The notes beneath the pieces are model-generated. The model made no database searches, was not told the DNA's origin, and saw nothing but the letters and a program-made list of their open reading frames with translations. From Ranitomeya imitator (taxonomy: Eukaryota), in contig NC_091282.1 of the NCBI RefSeq assembly GCF_032444005.1, positions 861,738,001 through 861,802,000 of the forward strand: a stretch of 64,000 nucleotides of DNA. Reading direction: 5' to 3'. A program made the position numbers and the translations under genes. How positions within the stretch are numbered: position 1 is the stretch's first letter; every line of letters starts with the position of its first letter. Positions 3,132 to 32,185 of this stretch are shown piece after piece.

Positions 3132-3751
3132 CTAACGAATGAAAAAAAAAAAAAAGTCCAAGTGGGTGTTATCAGACAGTGAGACACGCTCTGCAGTGAG
3201 ATCAGGCTGTCATATGTCATAAGGAACAGTCTGTTCTCTAATAGATATAAAGACAGACCGCTCTAATGTCACTAATGTAAGTACAACAGATATTAAGTGT
3301 GGTTATTCACAACTCTGAACATGGAGTGTGGGAAATGGGCAGTACAGCAGAGCTACAGTGCTAGGAGAGCTGATAGGAGGGCTTGTAAGTTGACAAAAAC
3401 TCAGCTGTGCTGCTCTGCCCCCTTCAGCAACCTTATCTGGTAGGTGTTAAGGTACCTTCACACTGAGCGAAGCTGCAGCGATATAGACAACGATACGACC
3501 AAAAGGCGATCGCTGGAGCGTCGCTGTTCAGATCGCTGTAGAGACGTCAAACACACCAACGTTCGAACGATGCCGGAGCGATACAGTGACGTAACAGCGA
3601 CTCACGGATCGTTGTCGCTGGTTGCTTGCTTCACGTCAAACAGCAGTGGTGTAAACGATCCGATGAATTGGCAGTGTAGTCAGATAGGTGTCACCCAGGT
3701 GGGTGACACCCAGATAGGTGTCACCCAGGATGTGACGTCCCGGCGTCTCAG

Positions 3752-3767
3752 AATATAAACCGCGACT
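3752..3767 (+). promoter_or_regulatory. Inward-facing TATA core promoter motif at Harbinger left end (also 11952-11967)
   Basis: AATATAAACCGCGACT, followed by an exon-like segment ending in donor CG|GTATGT at 3945. Confidence 0.55.
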
Positions 3768-4727
3768 CTACAGCGATTGATTCACATTGTTCGAGAGCTG
3801 CGTATGCATGTTTTTCCTGCATTTCTAGCGTCCTGTCCGGAACGATCCTTCTCCAGCTACGATCCTCTTCTACCGTGAACGTTCTGTTCGGAACGCCGTA
3901 CTCCACTGCCGGCGTCTTCATCGGTTCTTTTATTGCTCATCAACGGTATGTTCAATTTTTTTTTTTTTTTGTATAGTAATGGCTATGTAGTAATGCTAGA
4001 CGCAATGCTTATCTAAGTATATGGTATAGTAATGTATAAAACATATCTGGCAGCTATCTTGTGCATCTGGTAAGCGGACACACAAGATGGAGGCACTTTC
4101 GGATGCAGTTTGCAAACTATTTGGCGCTGTGTAGCATTTTTTGCGCAAACTATATGGTAAGGCCAACCAACTCTTTTGTGTCTACCTTGGCTTAGCTGTT
4201 CCTGGCCTGCTCCGCAAGTAAATAAAAACAGCTCACAACTGGTAAACTAATTTTTTTTTTTTCACAAACTGACCTTATTTTTTTTTGATCAAGAGACAAT
4301 CACTGTCACGCTATCTATATTCATCAAGTACGGTGTCAGAAAAAATGAATTCATGATAAACATATACAGGCTCCTGAATTCACTATTTCTGACACCTGGC
4401 AGGTGAGCATAGATATGTACCGTGTGACAACCATTGTCCCCTCAATTTGTGTGATTATGGAGATGCATGTAATATTTTTGGCCCACCTCATATCTGTATA
4501 CTACAGACACACCAAGCTGCAGTCTTTTCATTTTTAACTACTGGAGATATTATGTGGGCCAAAAAGTGTGTGTGGCGACGTTTCTTGGCGCACGGTGTGT
4601 TGCCGGCGGCTATAGACACAATAAACCAAACATAATTGTGTCAAATCAAACTTTTTTTATGTTGTTAACTGAAAAATAACAAGTAACAGAACAATATCCC
4701 AAACAATGAAAGAAAAAAAAAAAAAAA

Positions 4728-6332
4728 TCAGAACCTCCCACGCCTCAAGAGGTGTCGCAGCGTGCGGCCATGTTGCTGTACTTGTTGCAGCATGAGCGCT
4801 GCTGTCCGCTCCAGGCGGTCTTGCTTGGCCAGCAGCTCTCTCACGGTGTCCGGTTCTGTGATAGAAGAGGTTGGAGAATGGACAGTGATTAAGCTGCAAC
4901 GGTGGCATGTGTTTACATAACCAGCAATTTTACGGTACCGTCAAAAATAACGATTTTTGTAACGATATCTTTGATTTCTGTGAAGTTGCAACGATATTGT
5001 TAACGCAATCGTTCTGTGTGACAGCGACCCAGCGACCACACAGTGACTTACCAACGATCACGACCAGGTCGTATAGCTGGTAATGATCGTTAGTAAATCG
5101 TTTATTGTAAAATGGTACTTTTAACTACACACTCAATTTTGTACTGCCCCAGAGGGCATTTTTTAGGTTCAATGTTTTAGAGTCCGTTTAGTCGTTGTCA
5201 AATGTGACATCCCACCGATAACCCCCTCCCACTTTCTCAATACTTACGGAAAAGGGACGCCTGTTGCTCATCCGCGGAGCTGCTGACCACCCATCCCCTG
5301 GCTCGGGCCACAGCTCCTGCTGCTGAAAGGAAGCAAATACATATCTGGTTAACAATTGAACTCACTGTGGTGAAGCGCTCGCTGGTTTTGTCACTTACGA
5401 ATGCTTGTCGCTGGAGAGAATGACGCCGACCCGGGGGAGGAAGATGGGTGTTGAAAGGGCGGGGTTGTGGCCTGCGGTGGGGTTACTGCACCTGTAATGT
5501 ACACAATATTTAACCTCCCTACTAATGGCCCGTATGGCGTCATTAAATTCTAAAAAAGGGTGGTTAACTTACGTGACGACACTGGCTGTGGGCTTCCGCT
5601 GCTAGCCGCTGTACTGCTGGCTGCAGTGGGTGCTGTCCTCTGCCGGCGGCGTCTCTCTACACCCCAAAAAAAGACACGCAAGGTTTAGACACCAGAAGTA
5701 CAGAGCTGTAGACTTAAATAAAAAATTAAGTAGGCGCCATCGCAATTGCCAGACATGAGGGGTAACTTACGTGACGGCCCTGGCTGTGGGCGTACGCTGC
5801 TGGCCGCTGTAGTCCTCTGCTGGCGTTGTCTCTCTATACACAAAAAATAAAGAAACACAATGTTTACACACCAAAGTACAGAGCTTCCGACACCCCCACA
5901 AATAACAAACCTAGGCCAGTGGCATAAAGGAATAAAATTTAAATTTAACTCCCCAAATCGAGGTACATATATAGAAGGTGGGAAGCGCCACACGGCAGTG
6001 CGAGTGTCCCTATTCCCCCCTCCCGATACTGTGTGTCTCCCAATTACACTATACTGTTACTTGCCTTGCCTGGTCTCTGCCCGCAACGTTGCCAGATAAA
6101 GTGGCTGTTTGTACCGGAGGTCGGCCCACTTTTTGCGCAGCTGCAGCGCACTGCGCCGGATGCCGAACCTCCGCTCCATCTTCTGGGCAATGTGGCGCAA
6201 CACCTCATTCTTGTGTAGATTTGGGTGTGCTGGGCGACTCTCCCGGCCCTCATAGTCCATGGCATCCATTTTTTTTACAAAAAAGCGGACCTCTGTCTGC
6301 CCCAAAGGAGGACATCGCTGTCTCGCCGCCAT
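4728..6332 (-). CDS. Third Harbinger gene: six-exon Myb/SANT-like (trihelix-type) protein with C-terminal coiled-coil-like segment, 236 aa, copy A
   Basis: Exons 6065-6332, 5771-5833, 5573-5656, 5399-5491, 5248-5322 and 4728-4855. All introns are phase 1. The first donor is AAG|GCAAGT, the other four are GTAAGT, and all acceptors are YAG. The 711 nt splice into one open frame. N-terminus contains IAQKMERRFGIRRSALQLRKKWADLR. Start context AAAATGG. Confidence 0.85.
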
Positions 6333-6638
6333 TTTAGCAAGAGAGACGCTGTATGGCACCACCCAGCCACGCCCAGAGGAGGTCCTTCATTCTACCGTTC
6401 TGGCGCGCAATTCGCAACGCTATAGCGTCTCCATTTATGCACACCGTCGCGGGTGTGACGTCGGCTCCAGAAGTCACTATTTGGCGTTCCCGTTATAAAT
6501 CAGCAGCGCTCATCGTCCTGTTTGTTTCAGTGGATGGTACATTTAATGGAGGGTATCTATGGGGTATGGCTGTTGTGTTAACGTTGCTTACAATTAGCCA
6601 TGTATATCTCTGTGTATGTATATATATGTGTGTGTATG

Positions 6639-6688
<50 letters not shown>

Positions 6689-6833
6689 CTTACATCCTAT
6701 GTTAACATTTTTGTCAAATGGTGCAGCATCGGTGACGCAACGGAGAATGCATTACAGTATTGGATGTCTTGTGTAAGTTTTGAAAATGATATGTAGTAAT
6801 TTTTTTTTTTCTTTTTTCCTTTCTCAGGTTGCC

Positions 6834-8093
6834 ATGTCTCATTCGGATGTACCTGTGATTGTTGCGGCCGCGTTATTGGTAGAAGCTCACAACCAGCTGG
6901 AGGTTCAAGCGCGAAACAATCGTGTAAAGCGTCAGCGCCGCATGTGGACCAAACAGTGGCTGCAGAAGAGGAATCAATTGTCCCATATGGGCCTTATAAG
7001 GGAACTGCAGGATAACAACCCGCATGATTTTCGTAACTACCTGAGAATGTCGGAGGACTCATTTAATGTCCTACTTGCAGCTGTAGAACCTTATATCAGG
7101 CGGCAAAATACACAGATGAGAGCAGCTGTCCCTGTGGATGAGAGGCTGGCTGTCACGCTGCGTTTCCTGGCGACTGGCAGGTCTATGCAAGACTTGCATT
7201 ACAGCGCAGCTATATCCCGATCCCTACTCAGCGTCATCATCCCAGAGACATGCAAAGCTATTGTCTCAGTTTTACACCGCAGTTACATGCCTTTCCCACA
7301 GACCCCGGATGACTGGAAAGAGATTTCAAGGGGATTTGAGGAGCAATGGCAGTTCCCTAATTGCGGTGGGGCCTTGGATGGCAAACATGTACGCATCACC
7401 CAACCACCACACTCTGGCTCCTTTTATTATAACTATAAGGGATATTTCAGCATAATTCTCATGGCCCTCGTAAATGCTAACTATGATTTCATAAGTGTGT
7501 CTGTTGGGATTAACGGGAGAGTATCCGATGGAGGAGTTTTGGAGCACACAGATTTTGGGGAACGCTTGAAAAATAATAAACTTGCCTTGCCGCCCAACAG
7601 TGACACAACAGAAAACATGAACTTTGTCTTTGTCGGAGATGAGGCTTTCCCACTGCATCCCAACCTTTTGAAGCCCTTCTCCCAGAAGACTCTGACACCG
7701 GAACGACGAATCTTTAATTACAGACTTTCAAGAGCTAGACGCGTTGTGGAAAATGCATTCGGAATTATGGCAAACCGATTTCGGGTTTTCCACACAGCAC
7801 TAAACATGAAACTAACGTCTATTGACTCTGTGGTGCTTGCTTGTTGTGTCCTCCACAACTTTCTACGTCGCCGTGATGCCACTGCATACAGCCCTCCACA
7901 GTATGTAGACTCTGTGGACCAGGGTAACGGAGATGTAACCCAGGGCGAATGGCGTCTAGACGCGCACAGGGTTTGTGGTTTGGAAAGTCTGGGTTCTGGA
8001 AGGTACTGTGATGATGCAACGAATAGCAGGGACAAATACTCTGACTTTTTCAATGGGCCAGGGGCTGTCCCATGGCAGTATCAACAGCTGTAA
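6834..8093 (+). CDS. Harbinger DDE transposase (HARBI1-like), 419 aa, copy A
   Basis: Motifs GALDGKH, VGDEAFP and RRVVENAFG (D-D-E) and an N-terminal HTH region (LAVTLRFLATG). The ATG follows acceptor TTCCTTTCTCAG at 6827; the first 18 codons of the ORF-track call are intronic. Confidence 0.95.
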   Translation: MSHSDVPVIVAAALLVEAHNQLEVQARNNRVKRQRRMWTKQWLQKRNQLSHMGLIRELQDNNPHDFRNYLRMSEDSFNVLLAAVEPYIRRQNTQMRAAVPVDERLAVTLRFLATGRSMQDLHYSAAISRSLLSVIIPETCKAIVSVLHRSYMPFPQTPDDWKEISRGFEEQWQFPNCGGALDGKHVRITQPPHSGSFYYNYKGYFSIILMALVNANYDFISVSVGINGRVSDGGVLEHTDFGERLKNNKLALPPNSDTTENMNFVFVGDEAFPLHPNLLKPFSQKTLTPERRIFNYRLSRARRVVENAFGIMANRFRVFHTALNMKLTSIDSVVLACCVLHNFLRRRDATAYSPPQYVDSVDQGNGDVTQGEWRLDAHRVCGLESLGSGRYCDDATNSRDKYSDFFNGPGAVPWQYQQL

Positions 8094-8401
8094 CGTAACT
8101 GTTGGCATAACTTTTACCATGTATTATGGATGATATTGTTGGGGGGTTCAAGTGCTCTTGTGTAAAAGTGCTCATTTTTAACAATTTTTGGATGACCCAT
8201 GATACTCCTTTTTCTGTAATAAATGTGAACATAACGATATATCTATTTGTTATTTCTTATTATTTTACATACATACCAATACATACCAATATACATATAT
8301 ATCTATGAACATACTCTACTTCTGTATCAATCATATGAAACCTGTGAGTCTGCAGCATCCTATGCACTAGTGATTTCCTGATGTGTGTGTGTATATATAT
8401 T

Positions 8402-9260
8402 AGTAGATGTTCACCATATTCTAAAGGTACCTTCACACTCATCGACTCTGCAGCGATACCGACAATGACGTCGATCGCTGTTTGGTCGCTGGAGAGCTGT
8501 CACACAGACAGCTCTCCAGCGAGCACCGATCCAGAAGTCCACGGGTAACCAGGGTAAACATCGGGTTACTAAGTGCAGGGCCGCGATTATTAACCCGATG
8601 TTTACCCTGGTTACCGTTGTAAATGTTAAAAAAAAATTACAATACATACTTACATTCACGCTGTATGGTCATGTCCCTCGCCTTCAGCTTCCAGCACTGA
8701 CTCAGCGCCGGGCGTAAAGTACAACGGTGATGTCAACGCTGTGCTTTACTACCGGACGGCGCTCACCAGTCAGTGCGGGAAGCCGAAGGCGAGGGACTTG
8801 ACCATACAGCGGGAATGTATGTACTGTTTGTTTTTTTAACATTGACAACGGTAACCATGGTAAACATCACGTTACTAAGAGTGGCCCTGCACTTATTAAC
8901 CCAATGTTTCCCTTGTTTCTTGTGACGACATCGCTGAATCGGCGTTACACATGCTGTGTGTAACGCCGATTCAGCGATGTCAGCGGGAGATTCAGCAACC
9001 AAAAAAAGTGCTGTACTTTCCCCAGCGACCAATGATCTCCCAGCATGGGCCTGATCGCTGGACGCTGTCACACAACAATTTAGTTAACGATATCGTTGCT
9101 ACGTCACAAAAAGCAACGATATCGTTAACAATATAGTTATGTGTGACGGTAATGTATTGGGTATTCTAGCATTTGCATGTCCCCGTCGCATATTGCCCAG
9201 CAACGTAGTATATTGACCAGCGGCGTCATTTATTGCCAAGCCAAAGAGACACGTAGTACA
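8402..9260 (-). mobile_element. Decayed Helitron-like 3' end fragment inside the Harbinger, split by the MITE
   Basis: 8402-8424 joined to 9153-9220 resembles the reverse complement of the Helitron-like end at 47761-47842 (ACTAGATGGTGGCCCGATTCTAA.GCATCGGGTATTCTAGAATATGCATGTCCACG). Confidence 0.55.
8425..9149. mobile_element. Harbinger MITE nested inside the autonomous element (copy B: 16614-17338)
   Basis: TAA|AGGTACCTTCACACT ... GTGTGACGG|TAA. The right TIR lacks its terminal TACCT. The internal GGTAACCAGGGTAAACATCGGGTTACTAAG palindrome is shared with the MITEs at 21769 and 32186. Confidence 0.85.
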
Positions 9261-9457
9261 TACACAAATTTAAGAAACCAAAAATTTAATTATTTGTATT
9301 AAAAATTTTATTATTTTTTATTACAATACTTTTTTAATGTTGATGAGGCATAGGGGATTAATGACCGGGTGCCAGGAGGATGCCTGCAGGGGAGAAGGCA
9401 TAGGGGATTACTTGTGGAGCATCTAAAACACAAGTCTCATTTATTTCAACTACAACA

Positions 9458-10756
9458 CTACAAATTTTGGTAGTAAGTGTCCATCTCACTGTAGTGGTGC
9501 GTGGCCATAGGAGGTCCTTGTGATAAGTCACCAAAAGAAGGGGGTGCAGGTGGTGTCCGGAACTGAGAATTATGTGGCCCAGGTCTGCGGACAGGAGTGC
9601 TGTGCATGGGCTCCTGTTGGTGTCCCCAATAAAAATGGGCACTGGGCTGACGGACGTCAATGCTCAATGTTGATGTGTCGCATAGTTTTCCTGCGGCTGC
9701 CGCGTTCATAACGTCAAACATTATTCTCTCCGCGTGAGATCTTTGGGTATCATCCAGTCTGTTTAAACGTTCCTCAACCAAGGATGCGAATGGGGAGAGT
9801 TTGGTTGTGACGTGCTTGGACAAGATGCTGTTGGCCACTGCCAGGAGATCCACAGGTGTGGCTGCTGTTGATTTTCTTTTTCTAGATGGGCGCAGTGGAC
9901 ATGTCTGCTCCTCGACAGACGGGCTACTGGAGGACTGAGGGGACTGGACATTGTTCGCTTCCGTTGTTTCCCGCTGTTGCAGAGGCACCTGCAATTACAT
10001 GAAAAAGAAAAATTTAAAATAAATAACATACAAACGACTCTGCCACACAGCCCTAGAGAGCCCACACCTCCCCAAACACCTCTATGCCCATTGGAACCTA
10101 TGAGGAACAGTTACCTGGGTTAAAAAACAAAGGGGTTAAAGAGCTGTGCTGAACTACATTGGCCGGCAATACTGTACGAATGTGCGGAAGACACAATGTT
10201 AATTACGGACACAGGAAGTGGCAGCTGTTATCATCAGGGGGATTAAACATGAACAACGTGACTCACTATTACTGGAAGCCATGCAGTCTCATAAACATAC
10301 AAGACACACGGCATGCTACAAGAAGGGAAGCTTGGGGCTACTTACATGGTCGTCAGGAGACTCAGGCAGGATATCTTCGGGCGATGGCTCACAAAGGCTA
10401 GTCACAGTCTGGCACGGGCGAGGGATCTCTTGGTCTCTAGTGAATGCCATCAGGTCGTAATACCACAGCCTGGGCACATAGACTTCCTCAGTTCCGGCCC
10501 CAGACTTCTTAGAATTTTCCACTTTGTTGACCTCTTTTTTGAAAACTGTGCGGAGAGCCTGGATCTTTTTCCTCACAATGTTTTCATCCACGGTCTCTGT
10601 GGGATGATACTCCCTGTAGACGGCCACCAGCTTCTCATACGCTTCTCTCTTCATGTAACGGTTGCTATAATCCTTAGATTTTATCTTCCACAAACAGGGC
10701 AGGGAGCGGTACATCTCTATGAGTGCCCGAACACAGTCCTGCTCATTTGTAGACAT
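9458..10756 (-). CDS. MADF (Myb/SANT-like) DNA-binding partner protein, 2 coding exons, 313 aa, copy A
   Basis: Exons 10346-10756 (donor CAT|GTAAGT) and 9458-9988 (acceptor TAATTGCAG), joined in phase 0. MADF signature LIEMYRSLPCLW...YSN...KKIQALRT...LWYYDLMAF. An upstream non-coding exon has its donor at 11221 (CG|GTGAGT). Confidence 0.9.
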
Positions 10757-11396
10757 CTTTAAAAAATAAAAAAATAAAAGTTAAGAAACAGCAAAAATTA
10801 AAAGTTTGATGAGCCGTATGCCGTTCCTATTGTTATCAGTCATTTTTTGTATGGGATGGTCCGTGGGACTATTTCCACCATTTAGGGGATGGGATGGGGG
10901 CCGTTTGTGTGTTTCCCCATAGCCACCATTTGGGGATGGGATGAGGGCTATTTTTATCCATTTTGAGCGTTGAAAAATTTGTAAATTCTATTGGCTGCTA
11001 TTTTGTCAATGGCCAATTTCATGTTGGTGAAACACACCATACTACAAAATCGTTTGCATTACCACTTAAAATGGAAATACTACGACGCTAAAGCGTCTTT
11101 GGTTATAAACGTGAAAGCTCTAAAAAAAAATCACTGCTGAGATGTAGTATACATCTATTTCTAGACACATAAATTAGTATTGCTGCATGGCAAATGAATA
11201 CAGCACAAGGATATACTCACCGTAGATGTACTAATTGAGAACGCTGCAGAGTTGAAGATCTACAAACAGGTCGCTCAAAAGTTACAGCCAAGACGCCCAC
11301 GAGTTGATGGAGAAGGAACACGATGGATTTCGAACCAAGACGCACACGAGATGCTCGTGGATGGCAGAGTACGCACAAGTGATTGAAAAGTTGTAA

Positions 11397-11412
11397 AGTC
11401 GCGGTTTATATT
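11397..11412 (-). promoter_or_regulatory. Inward-facing TATA core promoter motif for the MADF gene (repeated in copy B near 19586-19601)
   Basis: The reverse complement is AATATAAACCGCGACT, identical to the left-end motif, about 180 nt upstream of the donor at 11221. Confidence 0.6.
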
Positions 11413-12926
11413 TCGGAACGCAGGTACACATGACCCCGATGTGACCGATCAGCGTTCTCAGTGAGACGTAACAACAAAGCCATTTGAAATATATAACGTT
11501 ATGGCGTCACCTTTTGTAATGTAATAATGTGATTTAAAGGGGTCTTCTTTTGTAATAGTGATGCATTGTAAATACGCCCTTACGTAAAGTTCACACCTAC
11601 CTCCTAGGCTGTCGTGACAGTTGGCGTCACCTTTTGTAATGTAATGTAAAGGTACCTTCACACTGAGCGACGCTGCAGCGATATAGACAACGATACGACC
11701 AAAAGGCGATCGCTGGAGCGTCGCTGTTCAGATCGCTGTAGAGACGTCAAACACACCAACGTTCGAACGATGCCGGAGCGATACAGTGACGTAACAGCGA
11801 CTCACGGATCGTTGTCGCTGGTTGCTTGCTTCACGTCAAACAGCAGTGGTGTAAACGATCCGATGAATTGGCAGCGTAGTCAGATAGGTGTCACCCAGGT
11901 GGGTGACACCCAGATAGGTGTCACCCAGGATGTGACGTCCCGGCGTCTCAGAATATAAACCGCGACTCTACAGCGATTGATTCACATTGTTCGAGAGCTG
12001 CGTATGCATGTTTTTCCTGCATTTCTAGCGTCCTGTCCGGAACGATCCTTCTCCAGCTACGATCCTCTTCTACCGTGAACGTTCTGTTCGGAACGCCGTA
12101 CTCCACTGCCGGCGTCTTCATCGGTTCTTTTATTGCTCATCAACGGTATGTTCAATTTTTTTTTTTTTTGTATAGTAATGGCTATGTAGTAATGCTAGAC
12201 GCAATGCTTATCTAAGTATATGGTATAGTAATGTATAAAACATATCTGGCAGCTATCTTGTGCATCTGGTAAGCGGACACACAAGATGGAGGCACTTTCG
12301 GATGCAGTTTGCAAACTATTTGGCGCTGTGTAGCATTTTTTGCGCAAACTATATGGTAAGGCCAACCAACTCTTTTGTGTCTACCTTGGCTTAGCTGTTC
12401 CTGGCCTGCTCCGCAAGTAAATAAAAACAGCTCACAACTGGTAAACTAATTTTTTTTTTTTCACAAACTGACCTTATTTTTTTTTGATCAAGAGACAATC
12501 ACTGTCACGCTATCTATATTCATCAAGTACGGTGTCAGAAAAAATGAATTCATGATAAACATATACAGGCTCCTGAATTCACTATTTCTGACACCTGGCA
12601 GGTGAGCATAGATATGTACCGTGTGACAACCATTGTCCCCTCAATTTGTGTGATTATGGAGATGCATGTAATATTTTTGGCCCACCTCATATCTGTATAC
12701 TACAGACACACCAAGCTGCAGTCTTTTCATTTTTAACTACTGGAGATATTATGTGGGCCAAAAAGTGTGTGTGGCGACGTTTCTTGGCGCACGGTGTGTT
12801 GCCGGCGGCTATAGACACAATAAACCAAACATAATTGTGTCAAATCAAACTTTTTTTTATGTTGTTAACTGAAAAATAACAAGTAACAGAACAATATCCC
12901 AAACAATGAAAGAAAAAAAAAAAAAA

Positions 12927-14531
12927 TCAGAACCTCCCACGCCTCAAGAGGTGTCGCAGCGTGCGGCCATGTTGCTGTACTTGTTGCAGCATGAGCGCTG
13001 CTGTCCGCTCCAGGCGGTCTTGCTTGGCCAGCAGCTCTCTCACGGTGTCCGGTTCTGTGATAGAAGAGGTTGGAGAATGGACAGTGATTAAGCTGCAACG
13101 GTGGCATGTGTTTACATAACCAGCAATTTTACGGTACCGTCAAAAATAACGATTTTTGTAACGATATCTTTGATTTCTGTGAAGTTGCAACGATATTGTT
13201 AACGCAATCGTTCTGTGTGACAGCGACCCAGCGACCACACAGTGACTTACCAACGATCATGACCAGGTCGTATAGCTGGTAATGATCGTTAGTAAATCGT
13301 TTATTGTAAAATGGTACTTTTAACTACACACTCAATTTTGTACTGCCCCAGAGGGCATTTTTTAGGTTCAATGTTTTAGGGTCCGTTTAGTCGTTGTCAA
13401 ATGTGACATCCCACCGATAACCCCCTCCCACTTTCTCAATACTTACGGAAAAGGGACGCCTGTTGCTCATCCGCGGAGCTGCTGACCACCCATCCCCTGG
13501 CTCGGGCCACAGCTCCTGCTGCTGAAAGGAAGCAAATACATATCTGGTTAACAATTGAACTCACTGTGGTGAAGCGCTCGCTGGTTTTGTCACTTACGAA
13601 TGCTTGTCGCTGGAGAGAATGACGCCGACCCGGGGGAGGAAGATGGGTGTTGAAAGGGCGGGGTTGTGGCCTGCGGTGGGGTTACTGCACCTGTAATGTA
13701 CACAATATTTAACCTCCCTACTAATGGCCCGTATGGCGTCATTAAATTCTAAAAAAGGGTGGTTAACTTACGTGACGACACTGGCTGTGGGCTTCCGCTG
13801 CTAGCCGCTGTACTGCTGGCTGCAGTGGGTGCTGTCTTCTGCCGGCGGCGTCTCTCTACACCCCAAAAAAAGACACGCAAGGTTTAGACACCAGAAGTAC
13901 AGAGCTGTAGACTTAAATAAAAAATTAAGTAGGCGCCATCGCAATTGCCAGACATGAGGGGTAATTTACGTGACGGCCCTGGCTGTGGGCGTACGCTGCT
14001 GGCCGCTGTAGTCCTCTGCTGGCGTTGTCTCTCTATACACAAAAAATAAAGAAACACAATGTTTACACACCAAAGTACAGAGCTTCCGACACCCCCACAA
14101 ATAACAAACCTAGGCCAGTGGCATAAAGGAATAAAATTTAAATTTAACTCCCCAAATCGAGGTACATATATAGAAGGTGGGAAGCGCCACACGGCAGTGC
14201 GAGTGTCCCTATTCCCCCCTCCCGATACTGTGTGTCTCCCAATTACACTATACTGTTACTTGCCTTGCCTGGTCTCTGCCCGCAACGTTGCCAGATAAAG
14301 TGGCTGTTTGTACCGGAGGTCGGCCCACTTTTTGCGCAGCTGCAGCGCACTGCGCCGGATGCCGAACCTCCGCTCCATCTTCTGGGCAATGTGGCGCAAC
14401 ACCTCATTCTTGTGTAGATTTGGGTGTGCTGGGCGACTCTCCCGGCCCTCATAGTCCATGGCATCCATTTTTTTTACAAAAAAGCGGACCTCTGTCTGCC
14501 CCAAAGGAGGACATCGCTGTCTCGCCGCCAT
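12927..14531 (-). CDS. Third Harbinger gene, copy B
   Basis: Exons 14264-14531, 13970-14032, 13772-13855, 13598-13690, 13447-13521 and 12927-13054. One R/K change in exon 3; the exon 2 donor is GTAAAT. Confidence 0.83.
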
Positions 14532-14837
14532 TTTAGCAAGAGAGACGCTGTATGGCACCACCCAGCCACGCCCAGAGGAGGTCCTTCATTCTACCGTTCT
14601 GGCGCGCAATTCGCAACGCTATAGCGTCTCCATTTATGCACACCGTCGCGGGTGTGACGTCGGCTCCAGAAGTCACTATTTGGCGTTCCCGTTATAAATC
14701 AGCAGCGCTCATCGTCCTGTTTGTTTCAGTGGATGGTACATTTAATGGAGGGTATCTATGGGGTATGGCTGTTGTGTTAACGTTGCTTACAATTAGCCAT
14801 GTATATCTCTGTGTATGTATATATATGTGTGTGTATG

Positions 14838-14877
<40 letters not shown>

Positions 14878-15022
14878 CTTACATCCTATGTTAACATTTT
14901 TGTCAAATGGTGCAGCATCGGTGACGCAACGGAGAATGCATTACAGTATTGGATGTCTTGTGTAAGTTTTGAAAATGATATGTAGTAATTTTTTTTTTTC
15001 TTTTTTCCTTTCTCAGGTTGCC

Positions 15023-16282
15023 ATGTCTCATTCGGATGTACCTGTGATTGTTGCGGCCGCGTTATTGGTAGAAGCTCACAACCAGCTGGAGGTTCAAGCG
15101 CGAAACAATCGTGTAAAGCGTCAGCGCCGCATGTGGACCAAACAGTGGCTGCAGAAGAGGAATCAATTGTCCCATATGGGCCTTATAAGGGAACTGCAGG
15201 ATAACAACCCGCATGATTTTCGTAACTACCTGAGAATGTCGGAGGACTCATTTAATGTCCTACTTGCAGCTGTAGAACCTTATATCAGGCGGCAAAATAC
15301 ACAGATGAGAGCAGCTGTCCCTGTGGATGAGAGGCTGGCTGTCACGCTGCGTTTCCTGGCGACTGGCAGGTCTATGCAAGACTTGCATTACAGCGCAGCT
15401 ATATCCCGATCCCTACTCAGCGTCATCATCCCAGAGACATGCAAAGCTATTGTCTCAGTTTTACACCGCAGTTACATGCCTTTCCCACAGACCCCGGATG
15501 ACTGGAAAGAGATTTCAAGGGGATTTGAGGAGCAATGGCAGTTCCCTAATTGCGGTGGGGCCTTGGATGGCAAACATGTACGCATCACCCAACCACCACA
15601 CTCTGGCTCCTTTTATTATAACTATAAGGGATATTTCAGCATAATTCTCATGGCCCTCGTAAATGCCAACTATGATTTCATAAGTGTGTCTGTTGGGATT
15701 AACGGGAGAGTATCCGATGGAGGAGTTTTGGAGCACACAGATTTTGGGGAACGCTTGAAAAATAATAAACTTGCCTTGCCGCCCAACAGTGACACAACAG
15801 AAAACATGAACTTTGTCTTTGTCGGAGATGAGGCTTTCCCACTGCATCCCAACCTTTTGAAGCCCTTCTCCCAGAAGACTCTGACACCGGAACGACGAAT
15901 CTTTAATTACAGACTTTCAAGAGCTAGACGCGTTGTGGAAAATGCATTCGGAATTATGGCAAACCGATTTCGGGTTTTCCACACAGCACTAAACATGAAA
16001 CTAACGTCTATTGACTCTGTGGTGCTTGCTTGTTGTGTCCTCCACAACTTTCTACGTCGCCGTGATGCCACTGCATACAGCCCTCCACAGTATGTAGACT
16101 CTGTGGACCAGGGTAACGGAGATGTAACCCAGGGCGAATGGCGTCTAGACGCGCACAGGGTTTGTGGTTTGGAAAGTCTGGGTTCTGGAAGGTACTGTGA
16201 TGATGCAACGAATAGCAGGGACAAATACTCTGACTTTTTCAATGGGCCAGGGGCTGTCCCATGGCAGTATCAACAGCTGTAA
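15023..16282 (+). CDS. Harbinger DDE transposase (HARBI1-like), 419 aa, copy B
   Basis: Same protein as copy A; one synonymous change seen (GCT/GCC). Confidence 0.95.
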   Translation: MSHSDVPVIVAAALLVEAHNQLEVQARNNRVKRQRRMWTKQWLQKRNQLSHMGLIRELQDNNPHDFRNYLRMSEDSFNVLLAAVEPYIRRQNTQMRAAVPVDERLAVTLRFLATGRSMQDLHYSAAISRSLLSVIIPETCKAIVSVLHRSYMPFPQTPDDWKEISRGFEEQWQFPNCGGALDGKHVRITQPPHSGSFYYNYKGYFSIILMALVNANYDFISVSVGINGRVSDGGVLEHTDFGERLKNNKLALPPNSDTTENMNFVFVGDEAFPLHPNLLKPFSQKTLTPERRIFNYRLSRARRVVENAFGIMANRFRVFHTALNMKLTSIDSVVLACCVLHNFLRRRDATAYSPPQYVDSVDQGNGDVTQGEWRLDAHRVCGLESLGSGRYCDDATNSRDKYSDFFNGPGAVPWQYQQL

Positions 16283-17646
16283 CGTAACTGTTGGCATAAC
16301 TTTTACCATGTATTATGGATGATATTGTTGGGGGGTTCAAGTGCTCTTGTGTAAAAGTGCTCATTTTTAACAATTTTTGGATGACCCATGATACTCCTTT
16401 TTCTGTAATAAATGTGAACATAACGATATATCTATTTGTTATTTCTTATTATTTTACATACATACCAATACATACCAATAAACATATATATCTATGAACA
16501 TACTCTACTTCTGTATCAATCATATGAAACCTGTGAGTCTGCAGCATCCTATGCACTAGTGATTTCCTGATGTGTGTGTGTATATATATTAGTAGATGTT
16601 CACCATATTCTAAAGGTACCTTCACACTCATCGACTCTGCAGCGATACCGACAATGACGTCATTCGCTGTTTGGTCGCTGGAGAGCTGTCACACAGACAG
16701 CTCTCCAGCGAGCACCGATCCAGAAGTCCACGGGTAACCAGGGTAAACATCGGGTTACTAAGTGCAGGGCCGCGATTATTAACCCGATGTTTACCCTGGT
16801 TACCGTTGTAAATGTTAAAAAAAAATTACAATACATACTTACATTCACGCTGTATGGTCATATCCCTCGCCTTCAGCTTCCAGCACTGACTCAGCGCCGG
16901 GCGTAAAGTACAACGGTGATGTCAACGCTGTGCTTTACTACCGGACGGCGCTCACCAGTCAGTGCGGGAAGCCGAAGGCGAGGGACTTGACCATACAGCG
17001 GGAATGTATGTACTGTTTGTTTTTTTAACATTGACAACGGTAACCATGGTAAACATCACGTTACTAAGAGTGGCCCTGCACTTATTAACCCAATGTTTCC
17101 CTTGTTTCTTGTGACGACATCGCTGAATCGGCGTTACACATGCTGTGTGTAACGCCGATTCAGCGATGTCAGCGGGAGATTCAGCAACCAAAAAAAGTGC
17201 TGTACTTTCCCCAGCGACCAATGATCTCCCAGCATGGGCCTGATCGCTGGACGCTGTCATACAACAATTTAGTTAACGATATCGTTGCTACGTCACAAAA
17301 AGCAACGATATCGTTAACAATATAGTTATGTGTGACGGTAATGTATTGGGTATTCTAGCATTTGCATGTCCCCGTCGCATATTGCCCAGCAACGTAGTAT
17401 ATTGACCAGCGGCGTCATTTATTGCCAAGCCAAAGAGACACGTAGTACATACACAAATTTAAGAAACCAAAAATTTAATTATTTGTATTAAAAATTTTAT
17501 TATTTTTTATTACAATACTTTTTTAATGTTGATGAGGCATAGGGGATTAATGACCGGGTGCCAGGAGGATGCCTGCAGGGGAGAAGGCATAGGGGATTAC
17601 TTGTGGAGCATCTAAAACACAAGTCTCATTTATTTCAACTACAACA

Positions 17647-18945
17647 CTACAAATTTTGGTAGTAAGTGTCCATCTCACTGTAGTGGTGCGTGGCCATAGG
17701 AGGTCCTTGTGATAAGTCACCAAAAGAAGGGGGTGCAGGTGGTGTCCGGAACTGAGAATTATGTGGCCCAGGTCTGCGGACAGGAGTGCTGTGCATGGGC
17801 TCCTGTTGGTGTCCCCAATAAAAATGGGCACTGGGCTGACGGACGTCAATGCTCAATGTTGATGTGTCGCATAGTTTTCCTGCGGCTGCCGCGTTCATAA
17901 CGTCAAACATTATTCTCTCCGCGTGAGATCTTTGGGTATCATCCAGTCTGTTTAAACGTTCCTCAACCAAGGATGCGAATGGGGAGAGTTTGGTTGTGAC
18001 GTGCTTGGACAAGATGCTGTTGGCCACTGCCAGGAGATCCACAGGTGTGGCTGCTGTTGATTTTCTTTTTCTAGATGGGCGCAGTGGACATGTCTGCTCC
18101 TCGACAGACGGGCTACTGGAGGACTGAGGGGACTGGACATTGTTCGCTTCCGTTGTTTCCCGCTGTTGCAGAGGCACCTGCAATTACATGAAAAAGAAAA
18201 ATTTAAAATAAATAACATACAAACGACTCTGCCACACAGCCCTAGAGAGCCCACACCTCCCCAAACACCTCTATGCCCATTGGAACCTATGAGGAACAGT
18301 TACCTGGGTTAAAAAACAAAGGGGTTAAAGAGCTGTGCTGAACTACATTGGCCGGCAATACTGTACGAATGTGCGGAAGACACAATGTTAATTACGGACA
18401 CAGGAAGTGGCAGCTGTTATCATCAGGGGGATTAAACATGAACAACGTGACTCACTATTACTGGAAGCCATGCAGTCTCATAAACATACAAGACACACGG
18501 CATGCTACAAGAAGGGAAGCTTGGGGCTACTTACATGGTCGTCAGGAGACTCAGGCAGGATATCTTCGGGCGATGGCTCACAAAGGCTAGTCACAGTCTG
18601 GCACGGGCGAGGGATCTCTTGGTCTCTAGTGAATGCCATCAGGTCGTAATACCACAGCCTGGGCACATAGACTTCCTCAGTTCCGGCCCCAGACTTCTTA
18701 GAATTTTCCACTTTGTTGACCTCTTTTTTGAAAACTGTGCGGAGAGCCTGGATCTTTTTCCTCACAATGTTTTCATCCACGGTCTCTGTGGGATGATACT
18801 CCCTGTAGACGGCCACCAGCTTCTCATACGCTTCTCTCTTCATGTAACGGTTGCTATAATCCTTAGATTTTATCTTCCACAAACAGGGCAGGGAGCGGTA
18901 CATCTCTATGAGTGCCCGAACACAGTCCTGCTCATTTGTAGACAT
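17647..18945 (-). CDS. MADF DNA-binding partner protein, copy B
   Basis: Exons 18535-18945 and 17647-18177; identical translation in the ORF track. Confidence 0.9.
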
Positions 18946-21203
18946 CTTTAAAAAATAAAAAAATAAAAGTTAAGAAACAGCAAAAATTAAAAGTTTGCTG
19001 AGCCGTATGCCGTTCCTATTGTTATCAGTCATTTTTTGTATGGGATGGTCCGTGGGACTATTTCCACCATTTAGGGGATGGGATGGGGGCCGTTTGTGTG
19101 TTTCTCCATAGCCACCATTTGGGGATGGGATGAGGGCTATTTTTATCCATTTTGAGCGTTGAAAAATTTGTAAATTCTATTGGCTGCTATTTTGTCAATG
19201 GCCAATTTCATGTTGGTGAAACACACCATACTACAAAATCGTTTGCATTACCACTTAAAATGGAAATACTACGACGCTAAAGCGTCTTTGGTTATAAACG
19301 TGAAAGCTCTAAAAAAAAATCACTGCTGAGATGTAGTATACATCTATTTCTAGACACATAAATTAGTATTGCTGCATGGCAAATGAATACAGCACAAGGA
19401 TATACTCACCGTAGATGTACTAATTGAGAACGCTGCAGAGTTGAAGATCTACAAACAGGTCGCTCAAAAGTTACAGCCAAGACGCCCACGAGTTGATGGA
19501 GAAGGAACACGATGGATTTCGAACCAAGACGCACACGAGATGCTCGTGGATGGCAGAGTACGCACAAGTGATTGAAAAGTTGTAAAGTCGCGGTTTATAT
19601 TTCGGAACGCAGGTACACATGACCCCGATGTGACCTATCAGCGTTCTCAGTGAGACGTAACAACAAAGCCATTTGAAATATATAACGTTATGGCGTCACC
19701 CTTTGTAATGTAATAATGTGATTTAAAGGGGTCTTCTTTTGTAATAGTGATGCATTGTAAATACGCCCTTACGTAAAGTTCACACCTACCTCCTAGGCTG
19801 TCGTGACAGTTGGCGTCACCTTTTGTAATGTAATGTAAAGGGGTGCCTTTTTTAATGTAATAATGTGATGTAGGCATCACCTTTTGTCTTTGGAATGCAT
19901 TTGGGAGTATGGTGATAATTACATTACTATAATAATGTTCACACCACCTCCCAGGCCATTATGACAGATGGCGTCTCCTTTTGTAATTTGTAATATATTG
20001 GGATCTTCGAAATAATTGCGTATCTATCTACGAGCGACATTGCTAAATTTAAAGGCGTCTCCTTTTGTAATGCATAACGCCTACCTGGCCACAACAAGAC
20101 GCTGCGACGGCCCCTTTCATCGTTGCTGGCGTCGTTGCTTTTCATGTCAAACACAACGATTCAGGCTGATCTAACGACCAAATAAAGTTCTGAACTTTCG
20201 GCAACGACTAGCGATGTCACAGCGGGATCCGGATCGCTGCTGCGTGTCAAACACAACGATATCGTTATCCAGGACGCTGCAACGTCATAGATCGTTGTCG
20301 TTCTCGTTGCAATATTGCTCAGTGTGAAGGCACCTTTAGTCATCTGTGCTTTCTAACCATGCAAGAGGTTAAATCGGGAAATCAGGGCAGTCTGTCACAC
20401 AGTTGTGTGAAAATGTGTTTGCCCGCTTCCTGGTTTCCTATTCTTTTGCATGTTTGTCACACCTATATGTTCCAGATCACCAAACAGATTTAAATATTAG
20501 ACAAAGTTATTTTAAGTTATTTAAATATTAGACATTCTAACACAAGTAAACACAAAATGCAGTTTTTAAATGAAGGTCTTTATTATTAAGGGAAACCTAC
20601 AGCGCCCTGTGTGAAAAAGTGATTGCATCACCTCCCTCCCACCTCTTAAGCATAAATTAACTGTGGTTTATCACATCTTTGGGAAGCTCAGTTCAAATTC
20701 CCTAGCCACACCCAGGCCTGATTACTGCCACGCCTGTTCTCAAGAAATCACTTAACTAGGACCTGCCTGACAAAGTGAAGTAGAACAAAAGTTAGACAAC
20801 ATGCCACGAGCCAAAGAAATTCTAGAACAAAGTAATTGAGATGTCAGTCTGGAAAATGGTATAGAGTCATTTCTTTGGGACTCCAGCGAACCACAGAAAG
20901 AGCCATTATCCACAAATGACAAAAACATAGAATAGTGGTGAACTTTACTAGGAGTAGCCGTCCGACCAAAATTACCCCAAGAGTGCAGCGATGACTCATC
21001 CAAGAGGTCACAAAAGACCCCACAACATCTGAAGCAATGCAGGCTTCATTTGCCTCAGTTAATGTCAGTGTTCATGACTCAACCTTAAGACAGAGACTGA
21101 GCAAAAATGGCCGGGATGGCAGAGTTCCAGAACGAAAACCACTACTGAACAATAATAACAATTAAGGCTTATCTCAATTTTGCCAAAAAACATCTTGATG
21201 ACC

Positions 21204-22684
21204 TGTATTGCCAAGTTTTTAACACTAAGGTTCGGATACGGCTTTAAAGAAGGCTACTGCTTGCGATATAACGCAATTTTATTTCAAAATACAAAATTAA
21301 AGGAATAATATGATTGAATAGTATGATTGCATACACATTTGTATATTTTAAGATATAAAGTACATATAAGGATTAAATTCATATAATGATTAAGTACATA
21401 TACTCACATCATCCATCACCAAGGGGCTTTTAAACATCATCCATCTTGAAAATCAGAGAAGCAACACCAAGACAGAGCACCCCTGGGAGATTCATAACAC
21501 TGCACGGGGCATCCCCACTAATGCAGGTATCACAACACTGTACATGTACAGGTACTCCAGTTTATGCTTCTGTCTTAGTCATGTTTCTCTGGCCTTATAT
21601 AGTGATTTGCAATATGTGTAATTTTGGTTTCACCCTGCCCTTCAAGTGGCCAGCTTTCAAGATAGGATGAGACCAAGCTATCAGTCATACATCAGACAAT
21701 GGGCCATAAACCCATAGATACATAAAAAGCCCACAAAGGTTAGATAAAACCACCGTAGACAGAGGTTAAGGTACCGTCACATTTAGCGACACTGCAGCGA
21801 TACCGACAACGATGCCGATCGCTGCAGCGTCGCTGTGTGGTCGCTGGAGAGCTGTTACACAGACAGCTCTCCAGCGACCACCGATCCCGAAGTCCCTGGG
21901 TAACCAGGGTAAACATCGGGTTACTAAGCGCAGGGCTGCGCTTAGTAACCCGATGTTTACCCTGGTTACCAGTGTAAATGTAAAAAAACAAAAACAGTAC
22001 ATACTTATATTCCTGTCGCGTCCCCCGGCTTTCTGCTTCCCTGCACTGTGTAAGTGCTGGCCGTAAAAGCAGAGCGGTGACGTCACCGCTGTAATTGCTT
22101 TACGGCTGGCCGGCGCTGACACAGGATGCAGGAGGAGTGCAGGGAAGCAGAACGCCACAGACACCGGAATGTAAGTATGTAGTGTTTTTTTTTTTTTTTT
22201 ACATTTACACTGGTAACCAGGGTAAACAACGGGTTACTAAGCGCGGCCCTGCGCTTAGTAACCCGATATTTACCCTGGTTACCAGTGAAGACATTGCTGG
22301 ATCGGCGTCACACACGCCGATTCAGCGATGTCTGCGGGAGATCCAGCGACGAAATAAAGTTCTGGACTTTCTGCTCCGACCAACGATGTCACAGCAGGAT
22401 CCTGATCGCTGCTGCGTGTCAAAAACAACGATATCGCTAGCGATATCGTTGTGAAGTTGGTCAGTGTGACAGTACCTTTAAATAAACCTTGTTTTACAAT
22501 AACAAACAGAAACTTAAAACGGTTTGTGAACTGAAAGGTCTTCAGACAATAAATAAACAGTTCTCAAGATTGTGTCACAATGAGCATTGTCTGTCTGTAA
22601 ATGTATGACAAGAAATGCTGCTCTGCATGCATTCTGTATATTTCAATATGGACTCAAAATGGCCAATTTTATATTCACATTACA
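21204..22684. mobile_element. Solo LTR (about 770 bp without the nested MITE)
   Basis: TGTA...TACA termini, 5-bp TSD TGACC (21199-21203 and 22685-22689), AATAAA motifs. Removing it restores the Tc1 frame HLDDP.DFW. Confidence 0.75.
21769..22477. mobile_element. Harbinger MITE (709 bp)
   Basis: TTA|AGGTACCGTCACATTTAGCGA ... GTGTGACAGTACCT|TTA; long internal palindromes. Confidence 0.92.
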
Positions 22685-31597: not shown

Positions 31598-32185
31598 TTA
31601 TTGAGGCAATCTGAAAATTGCCTCTATGTAGCAGAGCCGATCGGGCTATGGCAGCTTCTAGTCTCCTATGGAGACTATTGAAGCATGCCAAAAGTAAAAA
31701 AAAAAAAAAAAGTTTTTAAAAATATAAAAGTTCAAATCACCCCCCTTAGCCCCATTCAAAATAAAACAAAAATAAAATCAAACATACATATATTTGTTAT
31801 TGCATTCAGAATTGCCAGATCAATAAAAAAAGGATTAACCTGATCGCTAAACGGCGTAGCGAGAAAAAAAAATCAAAACGCTAAAATTACATTTTTTTGG
31901 TCGCCGTGACAATACATTAAAATGCAATAACGGCCAATCAAAAGATTGTATCTGCATCAAAATAGTATCATTAAAAACGTCAGCTCGGCATGCAAAAAAT
32001 AAGCCCTCACCCAACCCGAGATCACGAAAAATGGAGACGCTACGGGTATCGGAAAATCGCGCTTTTTTTTTGTCTTTTTAAACAAAGTTTGGATTTTTTT
32101 TTTCACCACTTAGATAAAAAAAAAAAATAGACATGTTTGGTGTCTATGTACTCGAAATGACCTGGAGAATCATAGAGGCAGGTTA

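What the first reader, a model, noticed from the sequence alone, without database searches (positions are those of the whole stretch)
4728..6332. Hidden third gene in a Harbinger transposon: a six-exon Myb/SANT-like protein
Harbingers canonically encode two proteins, a DDE transposase and one Myb/SANT- or MADF-type DNA-binding partner. This element has both plus a separate minus-strand gene, head-to-head with the transposase, intact in both copies. Six exons (268+63+84+93+75+128 nt) with consensus splice sites join into a 236-aa ORF. It has an N-terminal trihelix-like domain (..QLRKKWADLR..), an R/S/P/A/T-rich linker and a coiled-coil-like end (VRELLAKQDRLERTAALMLQQVQQH). Five consecutive correctly phased introns are very unlikely by chance. 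The element therefore carries two different DNA-binding proteins. The extra one could be a second targeting factor, a self-regulator or an anti-silencing factor (all inference). It may also be a mobile source for frog Myb/SANT-like 'uncharacterized' genes.
Basis: partly seen in the sequence, partly recalled or inferred. Interest (0 to 1): 0.9.

Follow-up and report, generated by a model that had tools for sequence, protein, structure and literature searches.

The report
Third gene in frog Harbinger transposon
A Harbinger jumping gene in a poison-frog genome carries, besides its transposase and MADF partner, a real spliced third gene for a small Myb/SANT-type DNA-binding protein; related elements from poison frogs to Xenopus keep it too, but the first splice of this copy is doubtful.

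Summary
The gene is real. Spliced contigs from three studies show four of the five junctions (introns 2-5) exactly as predicted. Intron 1 differs: its donor is GC, not GT. It is never seen spliced in four runs, and if retained the frame stops after a 91-aa Myb-only product. Comparison still supports that junction: Ranitomeya variabilis orthologues join there, and Xenopus laevis has a phase-1 intron at the same place.

Exon 1 folds as a trihelix Myb/SANT domain of the NAIF1/TSNARE1/MSANTD kind. The tail is a basic, low-complexity linker and one long helix.

The "two copies" are not independent. One TTA target duplication and one pair of inverted ends (3450, 20335) enclose both 8.2-kb units.

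Transposase, this gene and a MADF gene lie together at three further frog loci. In X. laevis all three lie inside one element with TIRs and a TAA duplication, and all three are homologous to the window's (61/51/31% identity).

It is therefore a conserved three-gene Harbinger lineage, which the papers I could search do not describe. This scan had already found the same on other DNA of this genome. Its function as an accessory transposition factor is inferred.

The parts
3447..3449 (.). Left target-site duplication, TTA
   Evidence: TTA directly before the left inverted end; the same TTA follows the right end at 20336-20338.
3450..3504 (+). Left terminal inverted repeat (about 55 bp, starts AGGTACCTTCACACTGAGCG)
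   Evidence: Aligns with the reverse complement of 20281-20335. The pattern is found 7 times in the window against 0 expected.
20281..20335 (-). Right terminal inverted repeat
20336..20338 (.). Right target-site duplication, TTA
3445..11652 (.). Unit 1 of the internal head-to-tail duplication. It holds the left TIR and all three genes.
   Evidence: blastn self-match at 99.6% over 8.2 kb; 30 differing columns, 10 of them one microsatellite gap.
11645..19841 (.). Unit 2 of the duplication. At the junction, the left TIR follows a TAA at 11647-11649.
6065..6332 (-). Third gene, exon 1: start codon and the whole Myb/SANT trihelix domain (89 aa). The donor is AAG|GCAAGT.
5834..6064 (-). Intron 1: 231 nt, GC-AG, phase 1. 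Not seen spliced. If retained, its frame is open apart from TAA 6059-6057.
   Evidence: The intron position and phase are the same in X. laevis.
5771..5833 (-). Third gene, exon 2: basic R/Q cluster, a candidate nuclear localisation signal
   Evidence: joint 5656/5771 seen in runs X1 and X20.
5573..5656 (-). Third gene, exon 3, a duplicate of exon 2 by sequence
   Evidence: joints on both sides.
5399..5491 (-). Third gene, exon 4: P/S/T-rich linker
   Evidence: joints 5491/5573 and 5322/5399.
5248..5322 (-). Third gene, exon 5: conserved GW..SS motif
4728..4855 (-). Third gene, exon 6: one 34-residue helix, then stop TGA. The transcript runs on at least to 4571.
   Evidence: Joint 4855/5248 in runs X6 and X20; AF2 model with pLDDT 94.6 and helix at residues 4-37.
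12927..14531 (-). Third gene in unit 2: exons 14531-14264, 14032-13970, 13855-13772, 13690-13598, 13521-13447, 13054-12927
   Evidence: one amino-acid difference, R117K.
6333..6833 (.). Divergent intergenic region between the third gene and the transposase. It holds a TA/TG microsatellite at 6615-6685, and a GTAAGT at 6774 with an acceptor at 6827 just before the transposase ATG.
   Evidence: its promoter function is inferred.
6834..8093 (+). Harbinger transposase, 419 aa, one open frame. The unit-2 copy is at 15023-16282.
   Evidence: DDE_Tnp_4, E = 1.5e-33; the unit-2 protein is identical.
9458..10756 (-). MADF gene: coding exons 10756-10346 and 9988-9458 (314 aa). The unit-2 copy is at 17647-18945.
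   Evidence: MADF_DNA_bdg, E = 2.9e-15; splice sites read.
8424..9156 (.). MITE insertion or insertions inside the element. They share the element's TIR and follow a TAA.
   Evidence: contig depth in the thousands.

Best explanation
Window 4728-6332 (minus strand) is a real, transcribed and spliced gene carried inside a PIF/Harbinger DNA transposon of a dendrobatid frog, by protein identity most likely Ranitomeya imitator.

Its product has three parts: an N-terminal Myb/SANT trihelix DNA-binding domain of the same fold class as the Harbinger-derived proteins NAIF1, TSNARE1 and MSANTD; a basic, low-complexity linker; and one long C-terminal helix.

This Harbinger lineage carries three genes as a conserved set from Xenopus to poison frogs: transposase, MADF protein and this protein.

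Inferred mechanism: it is an accessory transposition factor. The trihelix domain would bind the element's DNA, probably at subterminal motifs. The basic cluster would take it into the nucleus. [quoted passage not shown] It would thus share with the MADF protein the duties that a single Myb-like protein performs in two-gene Harbingers.

In this copy the first intron has a GC donor and appears mostly retained. Much of its mRNA may therefore encode only the 91-aa DNA-binding domain.
For: Shown here:
- Exon model and open frame.
- Spliced joints for introns 2-5 in contigs of three studies.
- The two exon-1 variants seen in other runs are both synonymous, L65L and K51K.
- Exon 1 modelled at pLDDT 89. 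Nearest solved folds are the GT-1 trihelix and Zeste. Nearest predicted folds are MYPOP, TSNARE1, FSBP, NAIF1 and MSANTD3/4.
- 21 of 30 family members hit Myb_DNA-bind_5 and 17 hit Myb_DNA-bind_4.
- The C-terminal piece models as a single helix, pLDDT 94.6.
- The gene lies inside TIRs and a TTA TSD.
- DDE_Tnp_4, this gene and MADF lie together at three loci in Anomaloglossus and R. imitator. The gene sits next to a MADF gene at three more R. imitator loci.
- X. laevis L001:6425-12187 has a TAA TSD and 27-bp TIRs around all three genes.
- All three window proteins match their X. laevis counterparts: 61%, 51% and 31% identity.
- Junction 1 is supported by R. variabilis P0058/P0067 and R. imitator P0018, which join at the same residue, and by a phase-1 intron at the same place in X. 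laevis.

From the literature: the single Harbinger Myb-like protein binds subterminal DNA, binds the transposase and imports it into the nucleus (PMC9710019; PMC9392472).
Against: - Function is not tested. The complex prediction of the C-terminal helix with the transposase gave no answer.
- Junction 1 is unseen in four runs. RefSeq models of near-identical R. imitator copies (P0061, P0065, P0066) read through intron 1 and lack the Myb domain.
- No dN/dS could be computed, because no DNA was served for the close relatives.
- The runs are only guessed to be RNA and are unstranded contigs. Unspliced coverage could come from antisense transcripts or from DNA.
- Pfam scores of the window protein alone are just under the curated cut-offs.
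Confidence: 0.65

Rival explanations
1. The gene is a regulator, not a cofactor. The protein, or the 91-aa Myb-only form made when intron 1 is retained, would compete for the element's binding sites or titrate a partner and so dampen transposition. Intron 1 would act as the switch between the two forms.
For: Intron 1 is the only intron with a weak GC donor and is not seen spliced. Retention keeps the frame, with a single TAA after the DNA-binding domain. A canonical MADF partner is already present.
Against: Relatives in R. variabilis, Anomaloglossus and Xenopus are modelled as full-length proteins. The GC donor may simply be a defect of this subfamily. There is no direct evidence of repression.
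Confidence: 0.15
2. This copy's gene is a decaying member of a functional family. A GT-to-GC change at the first donor disabled joining of the DNA-binding domain to the tail, so the 236-aa protein is made rarely or not at all here. The family's function is carried by other copies.
For: GC donor; no joint for intron 1 in four runs while introns 2-5 are seen spliced; six RefSeq accessions of near-identical copies lack the junction.
Against: GC-AG introns with the AAG|GCAAGT context are functional in vertebrates (general knowledge). The other introns were each detected in only one or two of the four runs, so a miss in all four is about a 1-in-10 event on my rough estimate. All downstream exons are still open, and the only coding difference between the units is conservative.
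Confidence: 0.3
3. The gene is a host gene, a captured host fragment or a foreign nested element that happens to lie inside this one Harbinger copy.
For: It lies antisense between the left end and the transposase. Some relatives stand alone, away from any called transposase.
Against: The same three genes co-occur in three different gene orders in at least four frog species. All three proteins diverge together. In X. laevis one TIR/TSD pair encloses them.
Confidence: 0.03
4. The exon chain is a chance open reading frame.
For: None beyond the low-complexity linker.
Against: Four exact spliced joints; homologues at E = 1e-16 and full-length relatives; a confident fold.
Confidence: 0.01

Closest known systems
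Canonical two-gene PIF/Harbinger elements (such as zebrafish Harbinger3_DR, rice Ping/Pong, insect PIF)
   Same: DDE_Tnp_4 transposase, terminal inverted repeats, 3-bp TWA target duplication (TTA here, TAA in X. laevis), and a Myb/SANT-clan DNA-binding partner gene (PMC4482050; PMC9710019).
   Different: Two different Myb/SANT-clan genes instead of one: a MADF gene and this trihelix gene. BLASTP finds no similarity between them. A survey of 380 PHIS families reports at most two ORFs.
NAIF1, TSNARE1 (N-terminal domain), MSANTD3/4 and MYPOP: vertebrate genes derived, or thought to derive, from Harbinger Myb-like genes
   Same: The exon-1 model aligns over 83-92 residues with their trihelix domains (TM by query 0.6-0.68, probability 0.9-1.0). 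PMC9392472 treats them as Harbinger-derived.
   Different: Sequence identity is only 14-25% and Foldseek E-values are weak (0.08-0.7). Those are single-copy host genes. This gene is still inside a mobile element and is multi-copy.
Frog 'uncharacterized protein' genes (such as X. laevis LOC121399463; R. variabilis LOC143787373; R. imitator XP_069588948; Anomaloglossus KAM4015535)
   Same: Same family and same architecture: Myb-like domain, basic or low-complexity linker, C-terminal helix. R. imitator XP_069615936 is identical to the window protein over exons 2-6.
   Different: They are annotated as ordinary host genes with no note of a transposon origin. The R. imitator models of this subfamily omit the Myb domain.
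MADF/BESS-type PIF 'gene 2' of insects
   Same: The element's other accessory gene (10756-9458) is of this type.
   Different: The third gene itself does not reach MADF significance (E = 0.039, 14.7 bits against a cut-off of 22).

Membership tests
PIF/Harbinger DNA transposon (the element as a whole) | DDE_Tnp_4 / PIF-type transposase | tested here: met
   PF13359, E = 1.5e-33, full model length. The motifs LDGKH, SDGG and VENAFG can be read.
PIF/Harbinger DNA transposon (the element as a whole) | Terminal inverted repeats flanked by a 3-bp TWA target-site duplication | tested here: met
   TTA|AGGTACC...GGCACCT|TTA at 3447-3450 and 20335-20338. The X. laevis relative has a TAA duplication.
PIF/Harbinger DNA transposon (the element as a whole) | Two genes only (transposase plus one Myb-like gene) | tested here: not met
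   Three genes lie inside the ends. This is the point of difference, so the element is filed as a variant.
Myb/SANT-like trihelix domain (Pfam Myb_DNA-bind_4 / Myb_DNA-bind_5) | Profile match above the curated cut-off | tested here: inconclusive
   Window protein: 26.0 bits against 27 and 20.2 against 21.7. Of 30 family members, 21 hit PF13873 and 17 hit PF13837 at E <= 0.01.
Myb/SANT-like trihelix domain (Pfam Myb_DNA-bind_4 / Myb_DNA-bind_5) | Helical trihelix fold like GT-1 / NAIF1 | tested here: met
   AF2 model with pLDDT 89.4 and four helices. Top PDB hits are the GT-1 DNA-binding domain and Zeste (probability 0.93-0.98). The top 30 Swiss-Prot models are almost all Myb/SANT-like proteins.
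MADF domain (PF10545) | Profile match | tested here: not met
   E = 0.039, 14.7 bits against a cut-off of 22. No BLASTP similarity to the element's own MADF protein.
Harbinger Myb-like transposition cofactor (functional class, Harbinger3_DR model) | Encoded inside the element and retained across the element lineage | tested here: met
Harbinger Myb-like transposition cofactor (functional class, Harbinger3_DR model) | Binds the transposase | tested here: inconclusive
   Complex prediction scored 0.00, 'no answer'.
Harbinger Myb-like transposition cofactor (functional class, Harbinger3_DR model) | Binds subterminal repeats and is required for transposition | not testable with these tools
   Only candidate motifs were found: GTCAAACA occurs 8 times in 64 kb, all inside the element, 6 of them subterminal.

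The most novel reading that the evidence does not exclude
Frog Harbingers of this lineage use a three-protein transposition machinery. Two unrelated Myb/SANT-clan DNA-binding proteins (MADF and trihelix) would divide the tasks that one protein performs elsewhere: end recognition, nuclear import and transposase recruitment. Retention of the frame-preserving first intron would produce a DNA-binding-only form that tunes activity. This would be a new architecture for a eukaryotic cut-and-paste transposon, and a ready source of paired DNA-binding genes for domestication.
Probability: 0.3. Interest if true: 0.75.

Novelty: new variant of a known kind. Interest (0 to 1): 0.6.

Why it matters
PIF/Harbinger is the textbook two-gene DNA transposon. 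It is also the source of several vertebrate genes (HARBI1, NAIF1, MSANTD1-4, TSNARE1).

A lineage that has kept a third gene, a second DNA-binding protein, from Xenopus to poison frogs means the two-protein model of Harbinger transposition is not universal. It offers a natural system for asking how the duties of the Myb-like partner can be split.

It also explains a set of multi-copy frog 'uncharacterized protein' genes as transposon genes. That matters for annotating large anuran genomes and for searches for domesticated genes.

Finally, the element's ends match an abundant MITE family. This copy or its kin may therefore be the autonomous source that mobilises those MITEs.

Tried and rejected
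- **Complex prediction.** Transposase (6834-8090) with the exon-6 helix (4731-4853, minus): score 0.00, 'no answer', controls not run. Not evidence either way.
- **Inverted repeat 3737-3785 / 11379-11427.** I first took it as the element's ends. Rejected once the real TIR and TTA TSD were found at 3450 and 20335. Those inner repeats look like paired inward promoters with 5' exons.
- **Alternative GT donor at 6060.** It shifts exons 2-6 into a frame with stops. Rejected as the way to a long protein.
- **RNA runs.** No listed run is on record as RNA. The contigs are unstranded, so transcript ends, strand and expression level could not be read. No joint was seen for a transposase 5' exon.
- **Context look-ups.** P0009 was not on record.
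- **Literature.** Searches for a three-gene Harbinger found nothing. Repbase and Dfam could not be consulted.
- **C-terminal MADF exon.** No Pfam BESS hit.

Full report
**The observation**

On the minus strand, exons 6332-6065, 5833-5771, 5656-5573, 5491-5399, 5322-5248 and 4855-4728 join into 711 nt. This gives a 236-aa protein ending in TGA. Introns 2-5 have GTAAGT donors and pyrimidine-rich acceptors. The exon 1 donor, however, is AAG|GCAAGT, a GC donor. The GT four bases further on would shift the frame into a stop. Exons 2 and 3, with the introns before them, are visibly duplicates of one another.

**Transcript evidence**

Two searches found 13 holders in four studies. All are kept as contigs and only guessed to be RNA. 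I laid four runs, one per study, on 3600-9599. They gave joints with CT..AC ends (GT..AG on the minus strand) at 5656/5771, 5491/5573, 5322/5399 and 4855/5248. These are introns 2, 3, 4 and 5 to the base, in runs X1, X6 and X20. The spliced joints show that these runs hold RNA.

Intron 1 gave no joint in any run. Contigs 5771-6222 (X1), 5771-6566 (X20) and 5595-6588 (X5) run straight through it. Unspliced contigs also exist for the other introns, and each other joint was seen in only one or two of the four runs. Absence in all four is therefore suggestive, not proof.

If intron 1 is retained, the frame stops at TAA 6059-6057 after 91 aa. The intron is 231 nt, so the frame is otherwise kept and stays open into exon 2. 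The two exon-1 variants seen in other runs (6138 and 6180) are both synonymous.

**The protein**

- Exon 1 (89 aa) hits Myb_DNA-bind_4 (E = 1.2e-5) and Myb_DNA-bind_5 (5.8e-4), just under Pfam's cut-offs. It hits MADF only at 0.039.
- An exhaustive HMMER search found 49 cluster representatives. Of 30 aligned relatives, 21 hit Myb_DNA-bind_5 and 17 hit Myb_DNA-bind_4.
- The AF2 model (pLDDT 89) has four helices.
- Its best solved matches are the Arabidopsis GT-1 trihelix domain and Zeste.
- Its best predicted matches are MYPOP, TSNARE1, FSBP, NAIF1 and MSANTD3/4. PMC9392472 treats MYPOP, TSNARE1, NAIF1 and MSANTD3/4 as derived, or possibly derived, from Harbinger Myb-like genes.
- The tail is a basic and P/S/T-rich linker whose length varies by exon duplication, then a conserved GW..S motif and a final helix. 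The exon-6 piece models as one 34-residue helix, pLDDT 94.6.
- BLASTP finds no similarity between the third protein and the element's own MADF protein.

**The element**

- The transposase (6834-8093, +, 419 aa) matches DDE_Tnp_4 at E = 1.5e-33. The MADF gene (10756-10346 and 9988-9458, minus, 314 aa) matches at E = 2.9e-15.
- The true ends are TTA|AGGTACCTTCACAC... at 3450 and ...GTGTGAAGGCACCT|TTA at 20335. One TSD pair therefore encloses both units.
- At the internal junction the left end is joined to a TAA in the right subterminal region.
- 'Intact in both copies' thus adds nothing. The units differ by R117K in this gene and by nothing in the other two proteins.
- The same TIR heads an abundant MITE family. 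One copy has inserted inside the element at 8424.

**Relatives**

The closest relatives are all anuran. They come from Ranitomeya imitator, R. variabilis, Phyllobates terribilis, Anomaloglossus baeobatrachus, Hyperolius, Eleutherodactylus, Engystomops, Lithobates and Xenopus laevis. Nearly all are named 'uncharacterized protein'.

R. imitator XP_069615936 (P0061) is identical to the window protein over exons 2-6, so the window is most likely R. imitator.

Gene neighbourhoods:

| Locus | Gene order |
|---|---|
| Anomaloglossus (two loci) and R. imitator (one locus) | DDE_Tnp_4 (+), this gene (+), then on the minus strand a MADF gene at two of the loci and an unassigned 156-aa gene at the third |
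| R. imitator, three further loci | this gene next to a convergent MADF gene |
| Four relatives | this gene alone |
| X. laevis L001 (DNA served) | TAA\|AGGTGGCCATACA...TGTATGGCCACCT\|TAA at 6425-12187 encloses transposase, MADF gene and this gene |

The window's three proteins match their X. laevis counterparts at 61%, 51% and 31% identity. The gene order differs in the three cases, yet the set is kept. This rules out a chance capture in one copy. It also shows that the trio is old, or at least widespread, in anuran Harbingers.

**The first junction**

X. laevis has a GT-AG phase-1 intron at the homologous point. The 236-aa architecture is therefore the family norm.

In contrast, RefSeq models of near-identical R. 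imitator copies (P0061, P0065, P0066; six accessions) read the intron as protein and omit the Myb domain. That agrees with the contigs. I conclude that junction 1 is ancestral but unproven, and probably inefficient, in this subfamily.

**Mechanism (inferred)**

In two-gene Harbingers the single Myb-like protein binds subterminal motifs, binds the transposase and imports it into the nucleus (PMC9710019; PMC9392472). The third protein has the matching parts: a trihelix domain, a basic cluster and an interaction-type helix. The element also has subterminal motif arrays: GTCAAACA occurs 8 times in 64 kb, all inside the element.

I therefore read it as an accessory transposition factor that shares these tasks with the MADF protein. 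A regulatory role, possibly through the intron-retained 91-aa form, is the main rival. The one in-silico binding test gave no answer.

**Novelty**

A survey of 380 PHIS families describes at most two ORFs (PMC4482050). Six literature searches found no three-gene Harbinger. Repbase and Dfam could not be checked.

This scan has already reported the same kind of third gene, with the Xenopus parallel, on other DNA of this genome (s1-274988). It also holds first-reader notes of four-gene variants (s1-294663, s1-288129). I reached the result here independently.

Noticed in passing
window 3447-20338: One TTA target duplication and one TIR pair enclose both 8.2-kb units. At the internal junction (11647-11650) the left TIR is joined to a TAA in the right subterminal region. 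This looks like a one-ended or sister-chromatid transposition, or a microhomology (AAGG) duplication, and not two insertions.
   Followed up: partly
window 8424-9156, 16613, 21768-22451, 32185-32458, 4931-5100: An abundant MITE family shares the Harbinger's TIR (AAGGTACC[T/G]TCACA). One copy inserted after a TAA inside the element, and a piece lies in intron 5 of the third gene. Contig depth there is in the thousands.
   Followed up: partly
window 3737-3950 (+) and 11222-11427 (-): An inner inverted repeat, each arm with an inward TATAAA followed by an exon-like stretch that ends in a GT donor (CAACG|GTATGT, CTACG|GTGAGT). The right one fits the 5' exon of the MADF gene. If the left one serves the transposase, the third gene lies antisense in the transposase's first intron. 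No joint was seen.
   Followed up: partly
window 5834-6064 (minus strand): Intron 1 is 231 nt, and its frame is open apart from the TAA inside the donor motif. RefSeq models of near-identical R. imitator copies (XP_069615936, XP_069601395, XP_069602021) translate it and skip the Myb domain through three different odd junctions. They may be deletion derivatives, unusual splicing or annotation artefacts.
   Followed up: partly
L001:6672-9506 (Xenopus laevis): In the Xenopus element the last exon of the MADF gene (7460-7924, minus) lies inside a transposase intron (7193-8061). Transposase exons 8061-8869 in turn lie inside the MADF intron. The two genes are interleaved antisense.
   Followed up: no
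window 3546, 3635, 20146, 20246 (and duplicates 11746, 11835): GTCAAACA, often followed by AACGAT, occurs only inside the element and mostly in its subterminal regions, always in + orientation. These are candidate protein-binding sites.
   Followed up: partly
window 42727-47055 (+): An uninterrupted 1442-aa gag-pol frame of a Ty3/gypsy-type LTR retrotransposon with a chromodomain (RVT_1, RNase H, integrase, Chromo).
   Followed up: partly
window 23911-25604: A 20-bp minisatellite (GGAGACACGGGGGAAGTAT and variants, about 80 copies) that gives long spurious ORFs in all six frames.
   Followed up: partly
P0001 and P0005 (Phyllobates terribilis): Gene models fuse a KRAB-like N-terminal part, and a stretch resembling the transposase N-terminus, to the Myb-like domain of this family. 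This is either an annotation read-through or a possible chimeric or domesticated gene.
   Followed up: no
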